From the IMG/VR virus record IMGVR_UViG_3300028800_000001, positions 62,001 to 126,000 of that record: a DNA stretch of 64,000 bases. One strand, 5' to 3'. The translations under genes were made by a program, and so were the position numbers. Shown here one piece after another: positions 1 through 61,237 of this stretch; the first letter of the stretch is position 1; every line of letters starts with the position of its first letter. Under the pieces are notes generated by a model. It searched no databases. It was given only the letters and a program-made list of their open reading frames with translations, and was not told the DNA's origin.

Positions 1-95
1 ACGAAGGATCGCACGCATTTGTAAAAGATAGGGCGGTATAACGCGGCATGCAGTGATAGTTACCTCAAGGTCTGTGACCTGTTCTGCGCGACTCT

Positions 96-6068: not shown

Positions 6069-7076
6069 TTACACCTCCTGGTAATCACTCTTCTCGCCAA
6101 AAAGATAAGTATCACCAACATATTTAAGGACAACACGCCCCACCTTTGGGTCTGTGCGCTCCTGCAACGGTTTGACCACCACGCCCTCACGCATATGAGC
6201 GTTCTGCTCCATCAGCATTGTCTTTCCTTCGCTGTAGGCTTTAACGGTCTCCAGACTATAAGGAATGCGTGCAAGCTCTGGTACCGTCTCAATACCGTTC
6301 AAATGGCACACCGTCAGCAGGCTGTCCCAATCCAGGTAGTGCCCATCAACATAGATGTCAAAGACACGGTATCCTAGTCCTTTGACGCCGTACTGAAGGC
6401 TCTGCACACCAGGGCCATAAATCTCACCGTAAAAGATGACTTGACGATGCAATTCTGCTGCACGCTCAAGATAGGTGCGCACCGGCTCTAGCGAAAGCGG
6501 ATACCAATAGAGATTGCGGCTGTAGTCCGTTGGCTCTTTGCGCCGCATCGCATGCGAGCCTGCCATAAATTGCCCATTGATAATTCCCACGCGACTGTTA
6601 CTGCCGTGCAGCTTTTCAGTAATTACCACTTCTTCGCCAGGATGAAAAATGGTTGGGAAATTGCGCATGTTCTCGATTTCGGTATATTTCGTAAACAATG
6701 GATCATCCACCTCGTAATCAGCGACACCAGCGCGTACCGGTGGAAAGTATTTTTCCGCACCATAGAAGTCAGCGACGTTCTCGCCCACTTCCCACTCTTG
6801 ATCTGGTGGAATGGCAAGACCGAAGGACGGCTCGCCGCGTAGTCGTGCGCAACGAATACGCTGTTTGGATAAGTATTTGGTCACGTTTAACTTCTCAGAA
6901 AGTTCAAACGGTAAAATGGTGTCTATAGGGAAGTACACCACACGATCCCCTACCTGATACTCCCCTTTTCTGACGACAAGCTGCCAACCAAGAACGGTGG
7001 CGAGCTCTAGCGCATCAGCGTTGGTGTGTGGACGCAGTGACTCAATCGTGGCGACCGGAACAAGTAAACTACTCAT
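6069..7076 (-). CDS. RNA ligase, Rnl2-like (DRB0094 family) with N-terminal OB domain
   Basis: HTNADALELATVLGWQLVV, motif I TEKLHGSN, YGEIYGPG, VFDI, REGVVVK, LKYV. Confidence 0.9.
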   Translation of the reverse strand: MSSLLVPVATIESLRPHTNADALELATVLGWQLVVRKGEYQVGDRVVYFPIDTILPFELSEKLNVTKYLSKQRIRCARLRGEPSFGLAIPPDQEWEVGENVADFYGAEKYFPPVRAGVADYEVDDPLFTKYTEIENMRNFPTIFHPGEEVVITEKLHGSNSRVGIINGQFMAGSHAMRRKEPTDYSRNLYWYPLSLEPVRTYLERAAELHRQVIFYGEIYGPGVQSLQYGVKGLGYRVFDIYVDGHYLDWDSLLTVCHLNGIETVPELARIPYSLETVKAYSEGKTMLMEQNAHMREGVVVKPLQERTDPKVGRVVLKYVGDTYLFGEKSDYQEV

Positions 7077-7597: not shown

Positions 7598-7832
7598 TAT
7601 TTTTCTCCTCTTTCAACGCGTCATATTTTGCCTGTAAATCCTCACCAGGAAATAACACCTCTAACTGTTTGCGCACCCGCGACGCGATACAATTCTCACC
7701 ACACACCACATGCTCGCACACGTCTTCGGTAGACGCTGGACAATAAATGCATTCATTTCCCTCGTAGTCACCCAACACCTGCTCGTGATTGCATACCAAC
7801 GCTAACATTGCTTCTATTGCTATATCGTTCAT
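7590..7832 (-). CDS. hypothetical protein
   Basis: TTCAAGGAG leader downstream of promoter P1. Confidence 0.75.
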   Translation of the reverse strand: MNDIAIEAMLALVCNHEQVLGDYEGNECIYCPASTEDVCEHVVCGENCIASRVRKQLEVLFPGEDLQAKYDALKEEKNNA

Positions 7833-7864
7833 CTTCTTTTCTCCTTGAATTTTCTTACAAGGGA

Positions 7865-7918
7865 AGCATAGCGTAAAATACAGAAAACGTCAAGCGTTTT
7901 TTCTCTGTATTTTCAGAA
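7865..7918 (-). promoter_or_regulatory. promoter module P1
   Basis: TTCTGAAAATAC...TTGACG-N17-TATGCT. Confidence 0.85.
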
Positions 7919-8498
7919 GATACTGGCGTACTCGGCACACGTCCTTTGGCGCAATAACCAGCAAAAGATCAGGATGACGATCCCTTTTCAAGCTATCGCA
8001 CTCGTCACAGGCCGGAACACAATTATCCCAGGTGGTGCCACCCCCTTTCGATATCGGAACGAAATGATCCATGCGTTTCCACGGTCGCCTTTGGCAATAG
8101 GCACACTGCTGTGCGAAGTAGTCCAGCGTTTCTCTCCACTCTGTGAGCGTCAAGGTTGCTGGCGTTCCAGCTTTGAGCGCACGTTGTCTTTGACGCTGAA
8201 TATACGCCTTTGACGCATGCATTGGGAGCGGCTCAAGTTCTTGCGGCTGTTCTTCTATCTCAGGCGTCAAGTTGGTAAGAAATTCGCTATAGACTTGTTG
8301 CTGGTAGAGCGAGGTTGCAGAGGAAAGCAGCGCATGCCCCTCTGCAACCAGATCACATTCTGGTCTTCGTAGTAGTTTTAGAAGGTATTCGTGTGCCTGA
8401 TATTTTTCAGAGAACGCAATGGAGGCGTCAGGATGTGCCTCCATGTAGCGTTTTCCCAGGCGCATGAGCCCTGTATAATAGGCAATCAACTCTTTCAT
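7890..8498 (-). CDS. HNH endonuclease
   Basis: CAYC, DHFVPISKGGGTTWDNCVPACDECD. Confidence 0.85.
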   Translation of the reverse strand: MKELIAYYTGLMRLGKRYMEAHPDASIAFSEKYQAHEYLLKLLRRPECDLVAEGHALLSSATSLYQQQVYSEFLTNLTPEIEEQPQELEPLPMHASKAYIQRQRQRALKAGTPATLTLTEWRETLDYFAQQCAYCQRRPWKRMDHFVPISKGGGTTWDNCVPACDECDSLKRDRHPDLLLVIAPKDVCRVRQYLLKIQRKNA

Positions 8499-9070
8499 TT
8501 TTTACTTTGTAAGTACGTTTGTACTCTCGCTAGATCATCTGCCGGAAGGCCAATGCCTTCACTGAGCAGCTTCACACCTTTCTCCTGATCACAATACGAA
8601 CAAGCTGGAACACAGTTGTCCCAGGCCGTTCCCCCACCACGCGTAATAGGGATAAAGTGTTCTAGACATTCCCACAGCGCACGCTGACAATACGCACAGC
8701 GGTGATGAAAGTATTCTAACGTCTCTTTCCATTGTTCAACAGTGAGAGTGGCAGCGCGCCCTGCACGCTTCGCACGCAAATTATGCCAGAGAATATAGGC
8801 ATCTACATCCGTATAACGCCCTCGCAGCAGCAAGAGTGATGGATTTTCAGCGCGTAGCGTCTCAAGAAAGGTAGTGTAGACATTTTTCTCTAATGACGAT
8901 TTTGCCTGAGAAAGAAGTCGCTCCCCTTCCATTTCCCAGGCGTCTTCGTTCTTCTTTAGAATGGTAAGGATGCTTGCATAAGCGTCTGCTTTTTGCTTGA
9001 GTACGCGATGACGCGTACTGTTTTGCAGCGCCACACCAAACAATTGCTCATAATGCGTATGCATATTCAT
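8495..9070 (-). CDS. HNH endonuclease, paralog of 7890-8498
   Basis: CAYC, EHFIPITRGGGTAWDNCVPACSYCD. Confidence 0.85.
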   Translation of the reverse strand: MNMHTHYEQLFGVALQNSTRHRVLKQKADAYASILTILKKNEDAWEMEGERLLSQAKSSLEKNVYTTFLETLRAENPSLLLLRGRYTDVDAYILWHNLRAKRAGRAATLTVEQWKETLEYFHHRCAYCQRALWECLEHFIPITRGGGTAWDNCVPACSYCDQEKGVKLLSEGIGLPADDLARVQTYLQSKK

Positions 9071-9077
9071 CTCTTAT

Positions 9078-9455
9078 TTATTCCTCTAACCAGAGCATGC
9101 CATCAGAATAGTAAAGCATATCCTTCGTTCTCGGCAGCAAGTAACAGTGAACATCCGCGCCAACTTTCCCTACTTCAGTGAGTGGGTTAAAACAATAATG
9201 CGTACAAAATTCGCTATCCATCCATGCGGTCACCATATTGTTGCGTAGCAATGAAGTGGGAACATTTTTATTTTGAAGGACACGAATGTCATACTCTCCT
9301 TCGGCAACAACCAGGATCTCAAATTCTTTTCCCCAGGTGCGCAACAGGCCACCAACTGCACTGTCAGCCGTAGCCGCACATTCCCAGCAACCAGGACGAC
9401 CATCAAAGTAGGCCATATAATCATCCTGTCTTTTTTGCACTCGAATAACGGTCAT
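9078..9455 (-). CDS. hypothetical protein, HicB-like N-terminus
   Basis: IRVQKRQDDYMAYFDGRPGCWECAATADSAV pattern. Confidence 0.6.
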   Translation of the reverse strand: MTVIRVQKRQDDYMAYFDGRPGCWECAATADSAVGGLLRTWGKEFEILVVAEGEYDIRVLQNKNVPTSLLRNNMVTAWMDSEFCTHYCFNPLTEVGKVGADVHCYLLPRTKDMLYYSDGMLWLEE

Positions 9456-10873
9456 TGTAATTCCTCCATCAGCAGCGCCATCAACGGAAAAGTAACCAGG
9501 AAACGTGAGCGCGACTGTTCTTCATCGCGCTTTACCAAAATGGCAAAGTTGGCTTTCGCCTGCCGTACCATTGGGCTGCTGTCAGAGAAACGTTCCAAGA
9601 CCTCCAACATGTCAGCATACGCGGCTTCTGTTTCCAGGCGAACGTAGAAACTTCCCTCCTTTTGAAGGTAGGGTGAGCAGGAGAAAAGCAAATCAGTAAG
9701 AAAACTCAGGTATTCTGCGTTGGTTGCCCCATAGTGGCGCGCATAGCGGTCGAAAAACGTTTGTTCATCCTCGTTGAGTAAAAGTACGGTTCCCTGCTCC
9801 ATATAGGCATAGACCTTTGGGAGTAAATGATCGCTCTTATAGATCTCAACATAGGTTGGCACATCACTGTAGTATGCTTTGCTCCATGGGATACTTTTCA
9901 TATCTACGTTGGCCCTTGCGCAGAGCGCCGCTGTACAGATCACGCTATTGCCGACGCCATACGGGTGCCCATCATCGTGATGCTCGAAGGCGATATTATA
10001 ACGCCATACAAAATGGCTGTGCCAGATATCTAGTGTGTAATAAATTGCGCTCTTGAGCAAATGAAACGAGCAGCAATGATTCATGCCATGAAACCAGAAC
10101 TTACAATTAGGAAGGCCACGCTGCCAGGGATCTGCATTTTCTATATGATGCACATAATCCGCAAAGTAGTCCTGCGGTGTGCTGTACTCCTGCGCAAGGT
10201 AGTGCTCAAGCAGTTTGACCATCGCATCATCATCAGGATGATCGTATTCCACCGGTTGATAGTGATCAGGCGTCTCATCAATTTCATTTTTGGTATGATT
10301 GTCAAAGTGCCCAATCTGATGCAGGTATTGCATGCGTGCTACACGTAGTAATCGGTGGCGTTCGCAGCATAGTAAGAAGGGGCGAAGCTCTGGAATGCAA
10401 TCAGCATAATAATGATCTTCGTTATAGGTAAGCGTAGAGTTGAGCCAATGACGATATTCATCAATGATCTCTTCTTTACTCGTTAAAAAGACGTGCCCAA
10501 CGTCACGGGCGGTAAAGTGGCGGTACTCTGCGTGTTGTGGTTCCAGACCAAGAATAAGCGCCTCGACAAAAGCCGCATCAAAAGACCAACTGATTGTGAA
10601 AAATTCGATGTCAGCAGAATAGCCAGAGACCATCGCCACCCGCCACTCTGAAGAAACGCCTTTGAATATTTTGGTGGGAAGACCACCTTGCATGTCGAGC
10701 GCTAAACGGAATTTGCGCTCATTGATCGGACGATGTGCCTCAATATGAAACATCACATCTTCATCCGAGATAGCAACCGCGTTGACCGTTTTCACATAAG
10801 GACGAATAGCCGTACAAAACTTCTTGGCGATAGTCATCACTTCGCCTTCGTATTTTCTGAGTGTGCTCATCAT
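9452..10873 (-). CDS. hypothetical protein (473 aa)
   Basis: Long ORF, AAAGGA SD. Confidence 0.85.
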   Translation of the reverse strand: MMSTLRKYEGEVMTIAKKFCTAIRPYVKTVNAVAISDEDVMFHIEAHRPINERKFRLALDMQGGLPTKIFKGVSSEWRVAMVSGYSADIEFFTISWSFDAAFVEALILGLEPQHAEYRHFTARDVGHVFLTSKEEIIDEYRHWLNSTLTYNEDHYYADCIPELRPFLLCCERHRLLRVARMQYLHQIGHFDNHTKNEIDETPDHYQPVEYDHPDDDAMVKLLEHYLAQEYSTPQDYFADYVHHIENADPWQRGLPNCKFWFHGMNHCCSFHLLKSAIYYTLDIWHSHFVWRYNIAFEHHDDGHPYGVGNSVICTAALCARANVDMKSIPWSKAYYSDVPTYVEIYKSDHLLPKVYAYMEQGTVLLLNEDEQTFFDRYARHYGATNAEYLSFLTDLLFSCSPYLQKEGSFYVRLETEAAYADMLEVLERFSDSSPMVRQAKANFAILVKRDEEQSRSRFLVTFPLMALLMEELQ

Positions 10874-11275: not shown

Positions 11276-11330
11276 AGTATAGGAAGTTTTTGGAGCCCCG
11301 TCAAGCGTTTCTTCTTTGTATTTTCAGAAA
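11276..11330 (-). promoter_or_regulatory. promoter module P2
   Basis: TTTCTGAAAATAC...TTGACG-N17-TATACT. Confidence 0.85.
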
Positions 11331-11397: not shown

Positions 11398-11889
11398 TCA
11401 AGGCGTCCTCTTCAATTCATCACGCAGCCATTCAAGATATTCAAGGCGTGCTTCTTCCTCTGAGACTTCACGCGTTGCCATGTAAAAGTCTTCAAAATCA
11501 CCACGAAAAAGATCTTGCAGAGCACTGATTTGTTCCTGTTGGGCGTTCCAGGCGTCTTCAATTTCAGAAAGATGATACCAGGACTCGCCTCCAGGGGTGT
11601 CTTGCCGATACCCAATAAGATAGTCAGTTGCCCACACTGACCAGCGTTCGTATTCCCATGCGGTTATTTTCTCCAGGTTTTGTTGGAGGATCATATAGAG
11701 CGTAGGTACTTCATCAGGCGCGGCCTGATAGTCTAGATGCGCAAAGCCAAAGTTGCCACCTTCATCTTTATAATTAAACCCATAGAGAAAGCGAGTATCT
11801 TCTACGCTTATCAATTTGTAGGTCAGTGCCAACTGATCCATCTCATCAGGTGTGGTCTTCGCCATAATGAGGCCGTACAAACTACTCAT
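11398..11889 (-). CDS. hypothetical protein
   Basis: Start MSSLYG after GGAAGGA. Confidence 0.7.
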   Translation of the reverse strand: MSSLYGLIMAKTTPDEMDQLALTYKLISVEDTRFLYGFNYKDEGGNFGFAHLDYQAAPDEVPTLYMILQQNLEKITAWEYERWSVWATDYLIGYRQDTPGGESWYHLSEIEDAWNAQQEQISALQDLFRGDFEDFYMATREVSEEEARLEYLEWLRDELKRTP

Positions 11890-12085
11890 GTTCAAACATC
11901 CTTCCTGTCGCTGCGAACCGCGCAAGATATGGCAAGAGTTCCTGCATCTTTTTCTGAGTGAAAAGAATCGAGCCCAACCAAAGTTGCTCTTCAACAACCG
12001 ACGAGTTGCACACAACGTACTTTCTCTCGCGTGCGTCTACGTCCTCGATCAGCCCCAGGCCATTGTATTCTTGCTCTATTTTCAT
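11882..12085 (-). CDS. hypothetical protein
   Basis: ORF tiling. Confidence 0.65.
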   Translation of the reverse strand: MKIEQEYNGLGLIEDVDARERKYVVCNSSVVEEQLWLGSILFTQKKMQELLPYLARFAATGRMFEHE

Positions 12086-12175
12086 AATCTTTTACTTTCA
12101 GTGAATAAATATTCACATTTTTTATCACTTTGTTATCAAGTGTCGCTGCATTGTATAACATTTGTAAAAATGACC

Positions 12176-12205
12176 TTGCATATTCAGAATGCCCTCAGTT
12201 ATACT
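12176..12205 (+). promoter_or_regulatory. sigma70-type promoter for the + strand globin gene
   Basis: TTGCAT-N18-TATACT. Confidence 0.55.
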
Positions 12206-12233
12206 GGTTTTGTGATGTTTTTCTACTAGTTGA

Positions 12234-12947
12234 TTGGAGAGAAAACCTTTGCGCCCACCATCACTGATTCCGGCCATTCCATTTCGGCTCTTCTCAGAAC
12301 AACGCATTTGCGCGACGAAAACCAAAAGCGCTCCTACTATTTTGCATGCCTGTGCTTACGCAGATCACTGGAATGCGCAGACAAGAGAGATTTACGCCTT
12401 GCTTGACGGGATACGTACCAATGAGGATATTGCGCACCTGCTTGGACTCTCTGCGCTGGATGTTCGTCGCATTTTGAGTCTCTTTGCCATTATTGGCCTT
12501 GTTGACCTCTTTGACGAGAGCACCCAAAGCGTGCTAAGTTTTGATACCTATACCGTACGCAGAGCGGTTGACTTGCTCTACTTTGAACGCGATATTTTCC
12601 TGACACGCTTCTTTCAACTGCTCTTTCAAAACAGCGACTACACCATGCAGGAAAGCGCCGCGTTCTTTTCGTTTCTGCAATTCGTGGCGCGTGGCGGAAC
12701 CACGACCAAGCCCTTTTTTGCGGTCATTCAACAAGCAGGGCAAGAGCACCATGTCATGTCGCTTACCCAAGAGCAATGCGCGGCTATCAGCCTTGCCTTT
12801 TTTGTCGCGGCAGAACACACGCTGGGCTCCTGGTGGAACGAAACGCGTGCACACCACCTGCGCAACGCGTTCTTTCTCGTGACTGATACGCTCTTTACGC
12901 AAGAGTTAACCCAACAAGATTTTCATCACTTGCTCGCCGTATCGTAG
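12234..12947 (+). CDS. winged-HTH plus globin-like domain protein
   Basis: IYALLDGIRTNEDIAHLLGLSALDVRRIL (wHTH); FLTRFFQLLF, IQQAGQEH (F8 His), LGSWWN, AFFLV follow globin helix pattern. Confidence 0.65.
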   Translation: MERKPLRPPSLIPAIPFRLFSEQRICATKTKSAPTILHACAYADHWNAQTREIYALLDGIRTNEDIAHLLGLSALDVRRILSLFAIIGLVDLFDESTQSVLSFDTYTVRRAVDLLYFERDIFLTRFFQLLFQNSDYTMQESAAFFSFLQFVARGGTTTKPFFAVIQQAGQEHHVMSLTQEQCAAISLAFFVAAEHTLGSWWNETRAHHLRNAFFLVTDTLFTQELTQQDFHHLLAVS

Positions 12948-13253
12948 GCCACCAAGAGTCCAGTTATCTCCATCGCTGTAGCGAAGATAGGACAAGAAAC
13001 CTGCAAGGTTTGTCACCGTTTCGCAGTATTGTTTCAAGCGCATCTCTTTGCCCTGCAAGACGAAGAGATAATAGCCGCGTCCTTCAGCCGCACCGCGATA
13101 ATGCACAATAATCACCATGCCGTCTTGCGCTCTGTAAGCTACCTCTTGCGGATCATGCAAGAGTGCAAGAAGTAACCCATAGCGCTTTTCCTGTCGGACA
13201 TCAATATAATCTTTCGCATCACCAGAGTTTTGTCCTTCGGGGATACCACCCAT
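12906..13253 (-). CDS. hypothetical protein
   Basis: ORF tiling. Confidence 0.65.
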   Translation of the reverse strand: MGGIPEGQNSGDAKDYIDVRQEKRYGLLLALLHDPQEVAYRAQDGMVIIVHYRGAAEGRGYYLFVLQGKEMRLKQYCETVTNLAGFLSYLRYSDGDNWTLGGLRYGEQVMKILLG

Positions 13254-13279
13254 ACTATTTTCTCGCTTTCTCTTTCTCT

Positions 13280-13597
13280 TTAACGCCTTCGATAGGGACG
13301 TAATGACTCACGAATGGGATACCAGATCGTGTCATCCAAATCGTAGCCATGACGACTCACCTCTTCGGCAAACAGTTCTGACTCTTCATCGTTGTAACAG
13401 GCTTGCCAGACTGGCCGCTGCTGTAAACTTTCAAAGAGTGCAACCTCATAGTGGACGATAGCCTGACTCACGCCACGCTCGTCTTTTTGACACCCCATAT
13501 AATGCACTCGCACAATAAGCGTTTCCGCGCCTTCGCTATAACTTTCAATATTGTCAGCCTTGAACTCGGCTGCGGAAAATACCATTCCATCACTCAT
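13280..13597 (-). CDS. hypothetical protein
   Basis: ATGA overlap. Confidence 0.7.
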   Translation of the reverse strand: MSDGMVFSAAEFKADNIESYSEGAETLIVRVHYMGCQKDERGVSQAIVHYEVALFESLQQRPVWQACYNDEESELFAEEVSRHGYDLDDTIWYPIRESLRPYRRR

Positions 13598-15250: not shown

Positions 15251-15305
15251 AGTATAGCGCAGGCACGCTACAACGTCAAGGCTTTTTTCTCTGTATTTTC
15301 AGAAA
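15251..15305 (-). promoter_or_regulatory. promoter module P3
   Basis: TTTCTGAAAATAC...TTGACG-N17-TATACT. Confidence 0.85.
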
Positions 15306-19576: not shown

Positions 19577-19631
19577 AGTATACCGCTCTCCAGTTACGGC
19601 GTCAAGAAAATATTCATCGTATTTTCAGAAA
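19577..19631 (-). promoter_or_regulatory. promoter module P4
   Basis: TTTCTGAAAATAC...TTGACG-N17-TATACT. Confidence 0.85.
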
Positions 19632-24850: not shown

Positions 24851-24904
24851 AGTATACCTGAGCGGAGAAAAAACGTCAAGGGTTATTTCTCTGTATTTTC
24901 AGAA
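24851..24904 (-). promoter_or_regulatory. promoter module P5
   Basis: TTCTGAAAATAC...TTGACG-N17-TATACT. Confidence 0.85.
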
Positions 24905-37195: not shown

Positions 37196-38046
37196 TAAAA
37201 ATCTCCCTCTGCGACTTGCAGACAGGTAAGTCCAAGCGACCGCCAAAGCCGCACTACTTGTGCGCGGTCATCAAGTGCGTACTTCACGTTGTATTTCCCT
37301 TCGATTTGCTCGTGATACATTTCTTCTTTGACGATGAAGTCTTTTCTGAAGTCACCATCTTTACGCATGAAGAGATCGTGTGCTTCGAAACAAAAACCAG
37401 CGGCTCGAAGCCATGTATAGGTCGCTTCACGAAATTTATCGTTACGTCCAGAGGTGAAGAGGATCGTGGTACCTTGACTGATTTCGCTAAAAACAAGTCC
37501 GGCCACGACACTATTGACGATGTCCTCAGAAAAATCACGATCATAGGGATTGGCATCTCCAAAGAGCGCAAGCGTCCCATCCAGATCTACAATAATTGCT
37601 TGCGGTGCGCCCTCAACAGGTGCAGGTGGAACTATCGGTTTTGCCAGATACCTGTTGTACATATCACGGATAACTTTTTCCCCGACATAGTTCTGGCGTT
37701 TTTTATCACGAGCAATACACTCATCCACCGTGACGTGTGTGAAGTCTTTTATTTCTAACTTCGCGTTATTCTTCTTGGCACACTCTTGCCACATTGTTTG
37801 CGCAGAAGGTGAAAGATTACAATCATCCACCACAATATTCCACCCCCTCGCAAAGAAATAGTCAGCATGCAACAATTCTAACGCTCGTATATCTTTTTCT
37901 TTTGACGAAGAGCTCTGCCCTGCATCCGTCATCTCACGGAGTAAATCCCTGTTTATTCTTTTATAGTGCTCGTCGTGCACCAACTGCTTTGCATAGGTAC
38001 TTTTCCCAGAGGCCGGTAAGCCCAAAGTTATGATGAGTGTCTTCAA
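37195..38046 (-). CDS. pseT: polynucleotide 5'-kinase/3'-phosphatase (T4 PseT-like)
   Basis: GLPASGKST, INRD, VDLDGT, TSGR, DDRAQVV, CLQVAEGDF. Confidence 0.92.
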   Translation of the reverse strand: MKTLIITLGLPASGKSTYAKQLVHDEHYKRINRDLLREMTDAGQSSSSKEKDIRALELLHADYFFARGWNIVVDDCNLSPSAQTMWQECAKKNNAKLEIKDFTHVTVDECIARDKKRQNYVGEKVIRDMYNRYLAKPIVPPAPVEGAPQAIIVDLDGTLALFGDANPYDRDFSEDIVNSVVAGLVFSEISQGTTILFTSGRNDKFREATYTWLRAAGFCFEAHDLFMRKDGDFRKDFIVKEEMYHEQIEGKYNVKYALDDRAQVVRLWRSLGLTCLQVAEGDF

Positions 38047-39809: not shown

Positions 39810-40856
39810 TTATCCTTCCTCGTCTACTGCAAAAGGTTTGGTGGCCGCTGGATAGAGCAATTTCCAGATAGCCTCTTGATAATTTTTGTGATCAAGCATT
39901 GAAAACACAATACCAGAGTACCGAGTTTTGACCACCACAAGCGCCTGCTCTTTGCGCGAAGGCAGATCTTGTACCTGCACCACGATTTGCGCGCATTCCT
40001 GCTCGATAGCCGCAAACTGCGCCAACAATTCAGCGTTAGTTTTCTTCACCCAGTTGTAAAATTCATCCGGTACCCGATCAAGGAATTGTTCTAACGACTG
40101 TCCGCTTTTGAGTATTTCCCAGATGGTACGAGCGTTACACTGAGTAAGCAGCCTATGAAGTCTCTTATACTCCTCCATCTTGATTTTCACGCGAAGCCCA
40201 GAGGAGAAGCGTACTACAAAGCCCTCTTTGTTGGCTTCCTGTATTCTTGAGAGCGCCGCCACATCAGCCACACCATCATAGTGCTTCACGACTGGAAACG
40301 GAATCTCTTTTAAAAATTCAGGATTGCGTATAAGGGAAAGATCGCGACCGGTCTCAGTTTTAATAATCGTTAGCAGCACCAGATCATCCATATCACCGTA
40401 ATCGACCACGATTCTGTTATTTTTGTAGATCACTTCAAAAAGATAAGTGTACCCTTCTTTGAAACAAAAATCGCCGTACTTTCTCGCTAAGACCTCAGTA
40501 CCATGGAGCGCCTGCTCAGACGCAAAGCTCCCACGGGTTGCGGTGATCACTTCACCTTTATAGAGACACGCGATGAACAAGGAGCCATCCATTTTCTCAG
40601 TCACCACAAATGGCTCAATTGGCAGTGGCTCGTTGATCTGCTCTGCGTTGAAGAATTTTTTGAAGGGCCGTCCGATCACTTCGCCTGCGGTATCAGTGAT
40701 GAGTCCACGAGCGGAGAGAGTGACCTCATCCCACATGTTGTCATATTGCGCTTTTGCGGTATAATTCCAGATCAGCAAATTATGCACTGGATGCTCTCGG
40801 CAAGTAATATAGCCATCAGCCTCGTGCTGACGGTATGCAGTCAAATCTATGTTCAT
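39810..40856 (-). CDS. RNA ligase, T4 Rnl1 (RnlA)-like
   Basis: SARGLI, RPFKKFFN, EKMDGS, TRGSF, FEVIY.NNRIVVDY, EGFVV, KIK..EY. Confidence 0.92.
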   Translation of the reverse strand: MNIDLTAYRQHEADGYITCREHPVHNLLIWNYTAKAQYDNMWDEVTLSARGLITDTAGEVIGRPFKKFFNAEQINEPLPIEPFVVTEKMDGSLFIACLYKGEVITATRGSFASEQALHGTEVLARKYGDFCFKEGYTYLFEVIYKNNRIVVDYGDMDDLVLLTIIKTETGRDLSLIRNPEFLKEIPFPVVKHYDGVADVAALSRIQEANKEGFVVRFSSGLRVKIKMEEYKRLHRLLTQCNARTIWEILKSGQSLEQFLDRVPDEFYNWVKKTNAELLAQFAAIEQECAQIVVQVQDLPSRKEQALVVVKTRYSGIVFSMLDHKNYQEAIWKLLYPAATKPFAVDEEG

Positions 40857-49111: not shown

Positions 49112-50395
49112 CTAATAACTATAGCCATCGATTTTGTACAACGACTGACAATATCTATAGCTAATTCCTTCAGTAACTCCGTTTTTCGTTGCAATATTAA
49201 AGCTTCCGGTAGAGCGTATTGCAACCTTTCCAATGTATGTACCCGTCTTTTTCCCTTTTGTGATAATGGCTTTTACGATGTCACCGGTTTGAAAACCATG
49301 CACAACCTTTGCTTGCTTTGGCCCTGTTCTTGGGAAGCCAAAGCAATTCATTCTGCACATTTGTCTCGATCCATGCCCAATAGCTTTTATATGCAAAGGT
49401 TGAATATCTCTAAGCGATAGTATTTCAGGGGTACTTTTGCCTACACATACCGCATCAATCCAATGTTCTTTTGAAAGTTGCCTCAAAGAACGATTGTATT
49501 TTGTTAGTCCACCAGAGCCAACTTCAACAGGCAATCCAGCTTTCTTTAATTCCTCATATAATCGCCACCTTGTACTATTCACCGCAGCCGCATCTTTGAG
49601 CGGCTTCTTTAGTTGCGCAAGAATCTTATCCAGTCGCTTCTTGTCATGTTGCAAGAAATCCTGAATATCTTTCGTGTCTTTCTTTTTATTGCATGGTTCG
49701 CAAGCCAAACAAAGATTAGAGATTCGATCCGAACCGCCCTTTGATCTTGCTACTACATGCTCAATCTCCAGAGGCACATTCTCAGCGTCACAGTAACCGC
49801 ATTTTCGCTCCCATTTTTCTAATAGGTACTCTCTAATCTCATAGCCTTGCAGTGTACCTTGTTGATATTCAAATCCTGATATTTCTGGATTTTCCATTTT
49901 TTGCAGATCAAAGCGAACCAATTCTTGCGAGATAGCAACAAGGTTGCAAAGCAATCTCAGCTTTCTCATCCACGTAAGGATATTTTGTATTCTGCTCTCA
50001 AGCGATGGCGCTATCCAACCTTTCTTCTTGTTCCTACGATTAAGAAAACGTGGCTGACGATATCTTGTTTTTCTTTGTCTACGCGACCTTCGAATCATTT
50101 TCCTATCGGCAAGCGCTTTTCCAATAGTGTTCCCACGATGTTCAAGTTCTACGCCAAAGACAACTTCACCCGACTGATCATTTACAATGGCGATACCGGT
50201 TGTCTTTGAACCAGGATCAAGCTTTATTCGCAATGGCTCAACAATTGGATTATTTACTTCTCGTTTTAAGACGATTGTAAACGGATATCTTTTAAAAACG
50301 GCTGCTTTTCCTGAAGAGAGCAATCTCCTTGCTTCCCCTGGATGTACCGGATTTAGAATCTGTTTCTTCGTATCTAATACAAACACTTTTAACAT
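49112..50395 (-). CDS. iscB: RNA-guided endonuclease IscB
   Basis: PLMP-like VFVLD..LNPVHPGEARRLL..YPFTI; RuvC-I LDPGSK; RRSRR bridge helix; RuvC-II QELVRFD; HNH EIEHVV..GGSDRISNL..CN; RuvC-III HWIDA. Confidence 0.95.
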   Translation of the reverse strand: MLKVFVLDTKKQILNPVHPGEARRLLSSGKAAVFKRYPFTIVLKREVNNPIVEPLRIKLDPGSKTTGIAIVNDQSGEVVFGVELEHRGNTIGKALADRKMIRRSRRQRKTRYRQPRFLNRRNKKKGWIAPSLESRIQNILTWMRKLRLLCNLVAISQELVRFDLQKMENPEISGFEYQQGTLQGYEIREYLLEKWERKCGYCDAENVPLEIEHVVARSKGGSDRISNLCLACEPCNKKKDTKDIQDFLQHDKKRLDKILAQLKKPLKDAAAVNSTRWRLYEELKKAGLPVEVGSGGLTKYNRSLRQLSKEHWIDAVCVGKSTPEILSLRDIQPLHIKAIGHGSRQMCRMNCFGFPRTGPKQAKVVHGFQTGDIVKAIITKGKKTGTYIGKVAIRSTGSFNIATKNGVTEGISYRYCQSLYKIDGYSY

Positions 50396-50645
50396 TTTTT
50401 GCTCTTTCAAGCCTCCGCTTTCGCGGGTAATGGTCAACTCGACAATGTTACAAAACGGTTTTGTATGATTACTACACTGGCTTTACCCTTCCGCCTGTTT
50501 AATAGTAATCCGCAGAGGATAAGACTGTTGAAGCATCCTATCGTGCCTATATATTCGCTTTTAACGTAGATTTTCTTTCAAATCTGAGTCTGGTCAAATT
50601 GGTGGGCTCTCACAAGCCCCTGTGTTTTAATCAGGGGTATTTGAC
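50396..50645 (-). ncRNA. omegaRNA (HEARO-type) scaffold
   Basis: GTCAAATACCCC...TTGACCAGACTCAG...CTACGTT...GGATGC...CTCTGCG...TTAAACAG...CATTGTCGAG directly upstream of iscB. Confidence 0.85.
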
Positions 50646-60118: not shown

Positions 60119-61237
60119 TTACCAGAGTTTGCCTGCCAATTCATCTTTTACCGTTCGTCCGTGGACGCCTTGTCCGTCAATCGGCATGCCATGCCCTACA
60201 CTTGCCAAAATTTCGTTACGCACCTTTTGGCCGCCAATATAGCTGACGTATTTCTTCATCTCAATAACGCGTGGATCAGCCAGTTCATTACGAGACACGG
60301 CAGGGTTGTCACCATACATATAATCGTAGAGCCGTTTTGTAAGCGGAGCGACAGCCACCCCTGGCCCTTCGAATACATCATCCATCTTAATTGTTTTGGG
60401 ATCAAACGGAGTACGCTTATTCTTAAAGACGTAAGCGACCTGGGCACGTACAAGTGCCTGACTCATGTTACGAATGGAAAGCGGGTAACTCTCGGTACGT
60501 GCGGCGCGTACATAGCCGGTGACCAGACGTGCAAAACTTTCAGGAACGCTGAAGGGTTTGGGATTCCATACCTTCGGTGGATCGAGTGCCGCCCATTCTT
60601 CGCTCTTGAAGATTTGGCCGCGCTCGTACTTGTCAGAGGCCATCTGGATTGCAACAGCAAGCTCTGTCTCATAAAGCGGATAATCAAAGTTGTACGGATA
60701 GAAACGCTGGCCTGTGCTTTGTGGGATTTTGATATTGCCGACATGCTTGTCGTCATTACTACAAAACATGATGCGGAAGTACTTATTCGCTTCAACGAAC
60801 ATGTCACCGGTCGCTGTCACACTGTCCTCATCCAATACGGTGTTGTACATCGTAATGCCGGAAGCATCTCGTGCATGCGTAAGCTCGTCAATGATGACAG
60901 CCGCGCCTTCGCTCATCGCCGTCGCGACGATACCGAGCACATCTTGCGTGCTGCCAGCAATCAGACGGGTACCAGCAATCGCTTTCGTTTTGGTAACCTC
61001 TGGACTATTTTGAAAGTAGTAAAGATTGCAGCCTACGCGCTCACAATATTTCGCCATAACGAGCTTGGCGAAGTGTGTTTTGCCGGAGCCAGAGGGGCCA
61101 ATAAGATAGGGCACAAAGCCCATATAAATGAGCTCCAATATTTCTTCAGCCCGTTCTAAAAGGTCAACGCCGGTAATGCCCCGCTCCTTAATTTTTACTA
61201 AATCAAGCGGGGTGAACTTCTCTGCGGTAATAACCAT
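60119..61237 (-). CDS. MoxR/CobS-family AAA+ ATPase
   Basis: Walker A GPSGSGKT, Walker B IIDE, FCSN, RF; adjacent to VWA gene. Confidence 0.88.
   Translation of the reverse strand: MVITAEKFTPLDLVKIKERGITGVDLLERAEEILELIYMGFVPYLIGPSGSGKTHFAKLVMAKYCERVGCNLYYFQNSPEVTKTKAIAGTRLIAGSTQDVLGIVATAMSEGAAVIIDELTHARDASGITMYNTVLDEDSVTATGDMFVEANKYFRIMFCSNDDKHVGNIKIPQSTGQRFYPYNFDYPLYETELAVAIQMASDKYERGQIFKSEEWAALDPPKVWNPKPFSVPESFARLVTGYVRAARTESYPLSIRNMSQALVRAQVAYVFKNKRTPFDPKTIKMDDVFEGPGVAVAPLTKRLYDYMYGDNPAVSRNELADPRVIEMKKYVSYIGGQKVRNEILASVGHGMPIDGQGVHGRTVKDELAGKLW

What the first reader, a model, noticed from the sequence alone, without database searches (positions are those of the whole stretch)
12101..12947. 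Phage-borne winged-HTH/globin fusion on the opposite strand, with its own promoter and a palindrome
Seen: the only long + strand gene; N-terminal wHTH pattern; C-terminal globin-like helices with a His at the F8-like position (IQQAGQEH) but an apparently shortened CD region. Own promoter at 12176-12205 and palindrome GTGAATA-AA-TATTCAC (12101-12116) in the divergent intergenic region. Inference: a host-derived O2/NO-sensing regulator or degenerate heme-free derivative; I know of few globins in phages.
Basis: partly seen in the sequence, partly recalled or inferred. Interest (0 to 1): 0.6.

Follow-up and report, generated by a model that had tools for sequence, protein, structure and literature searches.

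The report
Phage winged-helix/globin fusion, divergent paralogue
A 327-kb soil jumbo phage really does carry a gene that joins a winged-helix domain to a haemoglobin-type (globin) domain; it is the degenerate copy of a better-preserved second copy in the same phage, and the family, which is linked to a nitric-oxide synthase gene in a related phage, had no match in any phage reference set searched here.

Summary
Window 12249-12947 (+) is a real gene and the only credible + strand gene in the 64 kb. It has a TTG start, a GGAGAG ribosome-binding site and encodes 232 aa; the ORF opens at 12234.

- **Protein.** It has an N-terminal winged-helix domain and a C-terminal 3-on-3 globin fold. His172 sits at the F8 position. 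The C-helix/CD corner is 6-10 residues short.
- **Family.** Pfam does not call it a globin. It is, however, full-length homologous to three other phage proteins, and two of those pass Pfam Globin. One is a canonical paralogue in the same genome (G000 237248-238078), beside a candidate replication origin. The other lies 15 nt downstream of a nitric-oxide synthase gene on a related 134-kb phage contig.
- **Heme.** The window's copy and its one orthologue form a divergent clade. The orthologue has no F8 His. In this clade the G and H helices evolve fastest and a new EF-loop motif is the best conserved part. Heme binding is therefore doubtful; I estimate about one in three.
- **Promoter.** The promoter is real-looking. 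It is a weakened version of the phage's own TTGACN-17-TATACT promoter family and is conserved in the related phage.
- **Palindrome.** On its own it is no rarer than chance. A dyad and an adjacent 11-bp-spaced TTATCA repeat are conserved at the same place in the related phage.
- **Function.** Most likely a local regulator with a relaxed globin sensor domain. DNA binding is not shown.

The parts
12249..12947 (+). Coding sequence of the winged-helix/globin fusion: 232 aa from TTG 12249. The ORF opens at TTG 12234 (237 aa, used for residue numbering).
12288..12536 (+). N-terminal winged-helix domain, residues about 19-101. HTH helices at 63-70 and 74-86, wing strands at 90-94 and 99-101. W46, Y54, A67 and L70 are invariant in the family.
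   Evidence: Sub-threshold Pfam wHTH hits; model and VIA-align Z 8-9.3; alignments.
12540..12908 (+). C-terminal globin-fold domain, residues about 103-225. Helices A 105-117, B 119-130, E 138-153, F 161-171, G 179-200, H 203-220. The C helix and CD corner are missing.
12747..12749 (+). Codon CAC for His172, at the position of the proximal (F8) heme ligand. His173 follows.
   Evidence: Alignments. Model confidence here is under 50.
12693..12722 (+). Clade-specific EF-loop motif GGTTT(K/E)PFFA, residues 154-163. It lies in the best-conserved stretch between the window's protein and its orthologue.
12176..12205 (+). Promoter TTGCAT-18 nt-TATACT, with an A-rich stretch (GTAAAAATG) just upstream. 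It is a weakened member of the phage's own promoter family.
12212..12219 (+). GTGATGTT box at about the expected transcription start, identical in the related phage.
12236..12241 (+). Ribosome-binding site GGAGAG, 7 nt before TTG 12249. It is also present before the orthologue's ATG.
12122..12139 (+). Direct repeat TTATCAC-N4-TTATCAA with 11-bp start-to-start spacing. It is conserved in the related phage and nearly unique in the genome; candidate operator.
12101..12116 (.). Palindrome GTGAATA-AA-TATTCAC, 15 nt upstream of the leftward gene's ATG. The related phage has a different dyad with the same TGAA-N6-TTCA core at the matching place.
11882..12085 (-). Divergent leftward neighbour (67 aa, weak match to phrog_3849, function unknown). 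No promoter of its own was found.
12906..13253 (-). Convergent leftward neighbour (115 aa, syntenic in the related phage). Its 3' end overlaps the fusion gene's 3' end by 42 nt.

Best explanation
The gene is real and phage-borne. It encodes a one-component-type protein with an N-terminal winged-helix domain and a C-terminal globin-fold domain of the flavohemoglobin / single-domain-globin lineage.

It belongs to a very small family. Four proteins were found, on three related soil or rhizosphere phage contigs. The conservative members still look like heme globins. The window's copy is a diverged paralogue in which the globin domain has been remodelled:
- the C helix and CD corner are deleted;
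- B10 Tyr has become Phe, and G5 Tyr has become Cys;
- a new conserved GGTTTxPFFA motif sits in the EF loop;
- the G and H helices evolve fast.

His172 is kept, but the constraint for classical heme binding is relaxed and heme binding may be lost.

Inferred, not shown: the protein is made at a low level from a weakened copy of the phage's standard sigma-70-type promoter, which fires antisense into a long leftward operon. It then acts locally. It would bind the conserved TTATCA direct repeats and the dyad in its own upstream region. That would control its own promoter, or leftward read-through into genes 12085-11398. The globin-fold domain would serve as the ligand-sensing or oligomerisation module.
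For: **Real gene**
- Codon score and lone + strand position.
- The same gene, orientation and neighbours occur in a related phage at 32-55% protein identity.
- It is present almost unchanged in several rhizosphere metagenomes.

**Family and homology**
- An exhaustive HMMER search of 1.84 billion representatives finds only P0003 (1.9e-20) and P0004 (5.3e-07).
- BLASTP to the in-genome paralogue P0005 gives 2e-07 over both domains.
- Profile-profile comparison of P0001+P0003 against P0005+P0004 gives probability 96.7, E 3.4e-10, over 179 columns.
- P0004 and P0005 pass Pfam Globin at 1.8e-10 and 4.8e-11.
- The family profile hits solved globins: HGbI 1.2e-15, flavohemoglobins 4e-10, and the globin domain of syNOS.

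**Fold**
- Globin Z up to 11.5 and winged helix Z 8-9.3.

**Degeneration**
- No Pfam Globin hit even at E 10.
- Alone against plain globins the clade reaches only probability 21.
- The CD deletion and residue changes.
- The orthologue has Tyr or a gap at F8.
- Identity to the orthologue is 55% in EF+F but 14-18% in G and H.

**Promoter and operator**
-.
Against: - No experiment bears on heme or DNA binding.
- His172 is retained. A neuroglobin engineered without its CD loop, deposited as a ferric form, is among the structural matches (7ohd), so a short CD region may not exclude heme binding.
- The winged-helix domain is near neutral (net -1, pI 6.3), against pI 10.2 in the paralogue. Its third helix is largely hydrophobic.
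- Structure searches of both paralogues also pick up PatA_N/PATAN domains at low TM. Those are protein-binding outputs (bioRxiv 10.1101/2021.06.11.447907).
- The confident model depends on globins in the alignment. With only the two clade members the mean pLDDT is 41.
- The operator proposal rests on a single pairwise intergenic comparison.
- The clade has only two members, so loss of the F8 His in one does not settle the other.
Confidence: 0.45

Rival explanations
1. Working heme-based gas sensor-regulator. His172 ligates heme. O2, NO or CO binding, or the redox state, changes the winged-helix domain's affinity for the upstream repeats. Phage gene expression would thereby be tied to the host's respiratory or nitrosative state.
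For: - His172 aligns with F8 in all alignments.
- The globin fold is predicted.
- Close kin are canonical globins, and one is co-oriented 15 nt after a NOS gene.
- A neuroglobin engineered without its CD loop, deposited as a ferric form, is among the structural matches.
- Language-model features place both paralogues nearest a globin cluster: 0.89 for P0001, which the tool rates as a lead only, and 0.93 for P0005.
Against: - It fails Pfam Globin.
- The CD corner, B10 Tyr and G5 Tyr are lost.
- The orthologue has no F8 His.
- The G and H helices, which line the heme pocket, are the least conserved part within the clade.
- Model confidence around His172 is under 50.
Confidence: 0.3
2. Not a DNA-binding protein. 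The N-terminal winged helix would be a PATAN-like protein-interaction module. It would dock onto a host or phage protein, for example a secretion or pilus ATPase, and the globin-fold domain would modulate that contact.
For: - Near-neutral N-domain.
- PatA_N clusters recur in structure searches with two independent models.
- The winged-helix matches in the PDB are protein-interaction winged helices such as GATOR1, the SEA complex and Rv2067c.
- PATAN is a protein-binding output domain (bioRxiv 10.1101/2021.06.11.447907).
Against: - No PF14332 hit even at E 10.
- TM-scores are only 0.25-0.42.
- The HTH-like motif matches Crp-type and designed HTH repeats.
- The paralogue's N-domain is strongly basic.
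- Conserved repeat boxes sit in the gene's own upstream region.
Confidence: 0.18
3. Metabolic helper enzyme: a nitric-oxide dioxygenase or NO scavenger that protects the infected cell, as flavohemoglobins and the globin domain of syNOS do.
For: - The family profile's best solved matches include flavohemoglobins and the syNOS globin.
- A relative sits next to a NOS gene.
- syNOS's globin domain is implicated in oxidising NO to nitrate (PMC6104048, title and abstract).
Against: - The window's protein lacks B10 Tyr and has no reductase domain.
- No NOS gene is present in this genome.
- Every family member keeps a winged-helix domain, which an enzyme would not need.
Confidence: 0.04
4. Decaying duplicate or mis-called ORF with no function.
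For: - Non-ATG start.
- Strong divergence from its paralogue.
- 42-nt overlap with the convergent gene.
Against: - The open frame, position and orientation are kept in a related phage at only 36% identity.
- Identity reaches 41-55% in particular segments.
- Gene-like codon usage.
- Promoter and ribosome-binding site are conserved.
Confidence: 0.03

Closest known systems
Single-domain FHb-type bacterial globins (Hell's Gate globin I 3s1i, HGbRL globin 3ubc/3wfw, Vitreoscilla Hb, flavohemoglobin globin domains)
   Same: - They are the best sequence-profile matches of the family.
- They are among the best structural matches of the model.
- They have the 3-on-3 fold and an F8 His.
- HGbRL shows that this lineage does get fused to signalling domains (Roadblock/LC7).
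   Different: - The window's protein fails Pfam Globin.
- It lacks the C helix and CD corner, B10 Tyr and G5 Tyr.
- It carries an N-terminal winged helix.
- It is phage-encoded.
Globin-coupled sensors (HemAT, DosC, BpeGReg, AfGcHK)
   Same: - A globin-fold sensor joined to an output domain in one chain.
- They appear among the structural matches at Z 7-8.
   Different: - In these sensors the globin is N-terminal and of the sensor lineage.
- Their outputs are MCP, GGDEF or kinase domains (the first and third from my own knowledge).
- Here the globin is C-terminal and FHb-like, and the partner is a winged helix.
Non-heme globin sensor domains (RsbR N-domain, pXO1-118, photoglobin, MabR N-domain)
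   Same: - The globin fold is reused as a sensor without classical heme ligation.
- Photoglobins and MabR are coupled to HTH modules (PMC8717448, PMC11617747).
- The stressosome RsbR is among the structural matches (7b0u, Z 7.8).
   Different: - No sequence relationship was detected.
- The window's protein derives recognisably from heme globins and still has the F8 His. It looks like an intermediate rather than a member.
syNOS (Synechococcus NOS with a globin domain; PDB 9q05)
   Same: - A NOS-globin functional pairing.
- The family profile matches its globin domain (E 2.6e-06).
- The relative P0004 sits 15 nt after a NOS oxygenase gene.
   Different: - There the two are fused in a single 1468-residue chain (the length of the PDB entry) with a reductase.
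- Here they are separate genes on a phage, and the window's own genome has no NOS.

Membership tests
Globin (Pfam PF00042, 3-on-3 globins) | Sequence reaches the family's curated score | tested here: not met
   No PF00042 hit for P0001 even at E 10. The paralogue P0005 (43.6 bits) and the relative P0004 (41.7 bits) pass the 22-bit cut-off.
Globin (Pfam PF00042, 3-on-3 globins) | Demonstrable homology to bona fide globins | tested here: met
   Met transitively: P0001 to P0004 at 5.3e-07 in 1.84 billion proteins, P0001 to P0005 at 2e-07, profile-profile probability 96.7. Directly against plain globins it is only probability 21, E 1e-3.
Globin (Pfam PF00042, 3-on-3 globins) | 3-on-3 helical sandwich (helices A, B, E, F, G, H) | tested here: met
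   VIA-align Z 11.5, 116 residues, 2.5 A to 1tu9, with 18 globins at Z 9.5 or more. Caveat: the model needed globin relatives in its alignment. With two sequences the pLDDT is 41.
Globin (Pfam PF00042, 3-on-3 globins) | Proximal His at F8 | tested here: met
   His172 aligns with F8 in all alignments. It is absent from the orthologue P0003.
Globin (Pfam PF00042, 3-on-3 globins) | C helix and CD corner with Phe CD1 | tested here: inconclusive
   A deletion of 6-10 residues removes the PxxxxLF segment. hhalign instead pairs Phe131 with the CD1 Phe.
Globin (Pfam PF00042, 3-on-3 globins) | Binds heme | not testable with these tools
   Needs a spectrum of purified protein. The complex job with heme gave no verdict.
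Flavohemoglobin / NO dioxygenase | Tyr B10 and Gln E7 distal pair, His-Tyr(G5)-Glu proximal triad, FAD/NAD reductase module | tested here: not met
   B10 is Phe, G5 is Cys182, and E7 is Gln139 or Glu140 depending on the alignment. No reductase domain is present. The paralogue P0005 keeps Tyr B10, Phe CD1, Gln E7 and Tyr G5.
Globin-coupled sensors | N-terminal sensor-lineage globin followed by an output domain | tested here: not met
   The globin is C-terminal. The best profile matches are FHb-type globins, not sensor globins. Sensor globins rank lower structurally, at Z 7-8.
Winged-helix DNA-binding regulators | Winged-helix fold with an HTH | tested here: met
   Model secondary structure: helices at 48-55, 63-70 and 74-86, then two strands. 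VIA-align gives Z 8-9.3 to winged helices. Pfam hits are sub-threshold only.
Winged-helix DNA-binding regulators | Binds specific DNA | not testable with these tools
   Indirect evidence only: conserved repeats upstream in favour, and a near-neutral domain against.
PATAN / PatA_N (PF14332) | Match to the family profile | tested here: not met
   No PF14332 hit at E 10 for any of the four N-domains. Only low-TM structural resemblance was found.
Non-heme globin sensors (RsbR-type) | Globin fold without a heme-ligating His | tested here: inconclusive
   P0001 keeps His172 and the orthologue P0003 lacks it. No sequence link to RsbR, photoglobin or MabR was seen.

The most novel reading that the evidence does not exclude
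This group of soil jumbo phages runs a small heme-based gas-sensing circuit of its own. Winged-helix/globin proteins would read O2, NO or redox state in the infected cell and set phage transcription or replication accordingly. One copy would sit at the replication origin and a relative would be paired with a phage NO synthase. The window's copy would be a working, CD-less, His172-ligated sensor that gates a leftward operon by binding the repeats at 12101-12139.
Probability: 0.2. Interest if true: 0.85.

Novelty: new variant of a known kind. Interest (0 to 1): 0.62.

Why it matters
**Rarity.** I found no globin in any phage reference set searched:
- The three phage proteins give no tblastn match in 50,697 GenBank phage records.
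- None of 38,880 PHROG families matches them, or a canonical bacterial globin.
- Two literature searches turned up no phage globin.

**What the family offers.** A phage-specific family that joins a heme-globin lineage to a winged helix would be a new architecture for globin-coupled signalling. It would also be a new kind of phage regulator.

**Stages of remodelling in one lineage.**
- A canonical copy.
- A NOS-linked copy.
- A CD-less copy that keeps the F8 His.
- A copy without that His.

This makes the family a natural series for asking how a heme sensor becomes a non-heme sensor.

**Side findings.** The NOS-bearing relative and the origin-adjacent paralogue suggest that these phages interact with host NO or oxygen physiology. 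That can be tested with four small recombinant proteins.

Tried and rejected
- **Near and protein-level searches of GenBank phages.** P0001, P0004 and P0005 gave no match.
- **Word-index protein search.** It returned only the protein itself. Run with P0005 and with the family profile, it added only ordinary globins.
- **Pattern scans for more family members.** Viral contigs, metagenome contigs and prokaryote genomes yielded only the three contigs already known. 'Relatives' cannot be drawn for a virus record, so the host was not identified. Chloroflexota recur in the Atlas hits, but that is only a lead.
- **Structure from the two clade members alone.** Mean pLDDT was 41, which is unusable. The fold evidence is therefore not independent of the sequence link to globins.
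- **Homodimer job with heme riding along.** No verdict (score 0.00, controls not run). It is no evidence either way.
- **Generic sigma-70 scan.** It missed the promoter because TTGCAT matches only 3 of 6 positions. The phage-specific matrix found it.
- **RNA readings of the intergenic region.** There was no Rfam match of note. The leftward RNA folds no better than shuffles (z 0.69).
- **Sequencing runs.** Only DNA contigs of rhizosphere metagenomes hold the region, and no RNA runs do. Laying four runs showed one synonymous change (12740 G>A) and one E203G change (12841 A>G). That is too few to measure selection.
- **PHROG label 'porphyrin biosynthesis'.** It is attached to window 60122-61237, which is a CobS-like AAA_5 ATPase. 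It is not evidence of heme synthesis.
- **Genetic code.** No alternative code was needed.
Full report
**Setting**

The window is bases 62001-126000 of a 327,295-bp virus record with direct terminal repeats, that is, a complete jumbo phage genome. The contig is a JGI metagenome assembly. The region occurs almost unchanged in several rhizosphere metagenomes. No close or protein-level match exists in 50,697 GenBank phage records. Nearly all genes in the window run leftward, and most neighbours of the finding are ORFans.

**Is it a gene?**

- The ORF 12234-12947 (+) scores 0.110 on a codon model trained on the genome's long ORFs. That is the best of the six frames and within the range of real genes.
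- Its GC by codon position is 0.57/0.40/0.55, close to the genome's 0.56/0.40/0.47.
- It is the only + strand ORF of 90 aa or more in the window that has a gene-like score and is not covered by a good leftward ORF.
- A 5.2-kb metagenome contig (L002) carries the same arrangement. A lone rightward gene (P0003, 199 aa) sits between homologues of the window's leftward genes: 9452-10873 at 38% identity, 12906-13253 at 32% and 13280-13597 at 55%.
- P0003 starts with ATG at the codon that aligns with TTG 12249. Both starts are preceded by GGAGAG. The product is therefore 232 aa, as the public gene call has it.
- Residue numbers below count from 12234.

**What the protein is**

Family scans alone leave the protein open. 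Pfam gives only sub-threshold winged-helix hits at residues 54-91, and PHROGs and NCBIfam give nothing. A phmmer search of the PDB picks up only the HTH-like stretch.

The exhaustive HMMER search of 1.84 billion representatives finds two relatives:
- P0003, at 1.9e-20 and 36% identity.
- P0004, at 5.3e-07 and 27% identity.

P0004 passes Pfam Globin (1.8e-10, 41.7 bits against a 22-bit cut-off).

A Pfam Globin scan of the phage's own genome then found a second gene outside the window, at G000 237248-238078. It is P0005 (276 aa, Globin 4.8e-11).
- P0001 aligns with P0005 over both domains (BLASTP 2e-07).
- P0004 aligns with P0005 at 4e-19.
- Profile-profile comparison of P0001+P0003 against P0005+P0004 gives probability 96.7, E 3.4e-10, over 179 columns.
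- Against plain globins, the P0001/P0003 pair alone reaches only probability 21.
- A profile of all four proteins matches solved globins: Hell's Gate globin I 1.2e-15, HGbRL, flavohemoglobins 4e-10, and the globin domain of syNOS 2.6e-06.

The globin assignment is therefore sound, but it is reached through the relatives.

**Fold**

With a seven-sequence alignment, AlphaFold2 gives mean pLDDT 75.9.
- A winged helix: helices at 48-55, 63-70 and 74-86, and strands at 90-94 and 99-101.
- Six globin helices at 105-117, 119-130, 138-153, 161-171, 179-200 and 203-220.

An all-against-all structural search puts globins on top: Z 11.5 with 116 residues at 2.5 A to 1tu9, then yeast and E. coli flavohemoglobins, thermoglobin and neuroglobin at Z 10-11. 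Winged-helix domains match residues 19-96 at Z 8-9.3.

Foldseek's list is also almost all globins, but at weak E-values (0.02 or worse). It includes an engineered CD-loop-less neuroglobin.

With only P0001 and P0003 in the alignment the model collapses to pLDDT 41. The fold evidence is therefore not independent of the sequence link.

**The heme pocket**

His172 aligns with the F8 His in every alignment. Its codon is CAC at 12747-12749.

Between the B and E helices, P0001 and P0003 lack the PxxxxLF segment that carries Phe CD1. They are 6 residues short of P0004 and about 10 short of P0005 and plain globins. hhalign offers Phe131 as a substitute for CD1.

| Position | P0001 | P0005 (paralogue) |
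|---|---|---|
| B10 | Phe | Tyr |
| CD1 | segment deleted | Phe |
| E7 | Gln139 or Glu140 (alignment-dependent) | Gln |
| F8 | His172 | His |
| G5 | Cys182 | Tyr |

The orthologue P0003 has no His at F8; it has Tyr or a gap, depending on the alignment. It also has a 5-residue deletion at the start of helix G.

Within the P0001/P0003 pair, identity is highest in the EF loop and F helix (55%, with a shared GGTTT(K/E)PFFA motif). It is lowest in G and H (14-18%), which are the part that Pfam recognises in the conservative members.

That is the signature of a globin domain under changed constraint. I put classical heme binding by the window's protein at roughly one in three.

**Promoter and upstream region**

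The phage has a clear promoter family: an A-rich upstream stretch, then TTGAC(G/T), 17 nt, then TATACT.
- There are 26 exact copies.
- There are 55 matches to TTGNNN-17..19-TATACT, against 11.3 +/- 3 in shuffles.

- It has the family's exact -10 hexamer but a poorer -35 hexamer and one extra spacer base.
- It scores 13.3 bits on the family matrix once one spacer base is removed, above the genome's 99.99th percentile of 10.3.
- It is the best site on either strand in 11800-13300.

The related phage keeps several elements at matching places:
- CCTTGxAT-18-TATACT.
- A GTGATGTT box at the expected transcription start.
- The GGAGAG ribosome-binding site.

No comparable leftward promoter lies in the intergenic region. 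The nearest leftward family promoters are at 15251-15279 and 11276-11304. I infer that genes 12085-11398 are reached by read-through across the antisense strand of the fusion gene. The fusion gene's 3' end also overlaps the convergent gene by 42 nt here, and by 15 nt in the related phage.

**Palindrome**

The palindrome at 12101-12116 is exact, but such inverted repeats occur 171 times in the genome. What is conserved at that place in the related phage is a different dyad with the same TGAA-N6-TTCA core. Next to it is a direct repeat, TTATCAC-N4-TTATCA(A/C), with 11-bp spacing (12122-12139). The combination is unique in the genome, and the direct repeat nearly so.

These are reasonable operator candidates, but they rest on one pairwise comparison. 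No RNA family or stable RNA fold explains the region.

**Does the N-domain bind DNA?**

This is open.
- It is near neutral (net -1, pI 6.3), whereas the paralogue's N-domain is strongly basic (pI 10.2).
- Structure searches with my model of P0001 and with the Atlas's own model of P0005 both bring up PatA_N/PATAN clusters at low TM (0.25-0.42).
- PATAN is a protein-binding output domain (bioRxiv 10.1101/2021.06.11.447907).
- No PF14332 sequence match exists even at E 10.

I keep DNA binding as the leading reading and protein binding as a serious rival.

**The family in context**

- P0004 lies on a 134-kb IMG/VR viral contig. That contig shares four other genes with this phage at 36-43% identity.
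- P0004 starts 15 nt after a full-length NO synthase oxygenase gene on the same strand (Pfam 5.2e-161).
- This phage has no NOS.
- NOS-globin coupling is known from syNOS (PMC6104048).
- Non-heme globin sensors and globin-HTH combinations are known from RsbR, photoglobin and MabR (PMC8717448, PMC11617747).
- I found no report of a phage globin.
- No PHROG family matches these proteins or a canonical bacterial globin.

**Verdict**

The gene encodes a winged-helix/globin fusion, most likely the degenerate member of a small phage-specific family rather than a freshly host-derived O2/NO sensor.

It is a new architecture within the known theme of globin-coupled signalling. It comes with a better-preserved paralogue and a NOS-linked relative, which together make the question experimentally tractable.

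Noticed in passing
Outside the window: G000:C1:237248-238078 (+) (L004:970-1800): A second winged-helix/globin gene in the same phage (P0005, 276 aa). It passes Pfam Globin (4.8e-11), keeps Tyr B10, Phe CD1, Gln E7, His F8 and Tyr G5, and has a strongly basic N-domain (pI 10.2). Like the window's gene, it is a lone rightward gene followed by leftward genes.
   Followed up: partly
Outside the window: G000:C1:235205-237247 (L006:3206-5248): A 2.0-kb non-coding, 32.6% GC region packed with repeats of about 21 and 52 bp. It holds 71 of the genome's 160 TAATTA and all 17 GGTATY-N3-9-TAATTA composites. The genome's cumulative GC-skew minimum falls in this 5-kb bin. It is a candidate replication origin or iteron array, and it abuts the start of the paralogue P0005.
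   Followed up: partly
L003:8823-10633 (IMGVR_UViG_3300027857_000012, 134 kb): A related phage contig encodes a full-length NO synthase oxygenase domain (Pfam 5.2e-161). The winged-helix/globin gene P0004 follows 15 nt later on the same strand. A receiver-domain gene lies just upstream on the other strand (7777-8241). I found no report of a phage NOS in the searches run.
   Followed up: partly
Window 11276-11304 (-), 15251-15279 (-), 19577-19605 (-), 24851-24879 (-) and others; genome-wide: A highly stereotyped phage promoter family: ACAGAGAAAAAAnnC, then TTGAC(G/T), 17 nt, then TATACT, often followed by TCCTGTA. There are 26 exact copies, and 55 loose matches against 11 expected.
   Followed up: yes
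Window 6072-7076 (-), 37198-38046 (-), 39813-40856 (-): An RNA-repair set: two RNA ligases (phrog_968 at 7e-50; phrog_562 at 1e-65) and a polynucleotide kinase (phrog_505 at 6e-80).
   Followed up: no
Window 60122-61237 (-): A CobS-like AAA_5 ATPase that PHROGs labels 'porphyrin biosynthesis' (phrog_249 at 4e-16; Pfam AAA_5 at 1e-13). The label is tempting next to a globin, but it is no evidence of heme synthesis.
   Followed up: partly
Window 8498-9070 (-) and 49115-50437 (-): Two HNH endonuclease genes. The second is a strong match to phrog_2214 (3e-140).
   Followed up: no
Window 13271 (9 nt): All four rhizosphere runs laid on the region lack 9 nt at about 13271, in the short spacer between leftward genes 12906-13253 and 13280-13597, relative to the window. 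This is an indel polymorphism between samples.
   Followed up: no
Window 12841: An A>G variant (E203G in the fusion protein) in two of four runs and in the public cluster representative P0002. 12740 G>A is synonymous and present in all four runs.
   Followed up: yes
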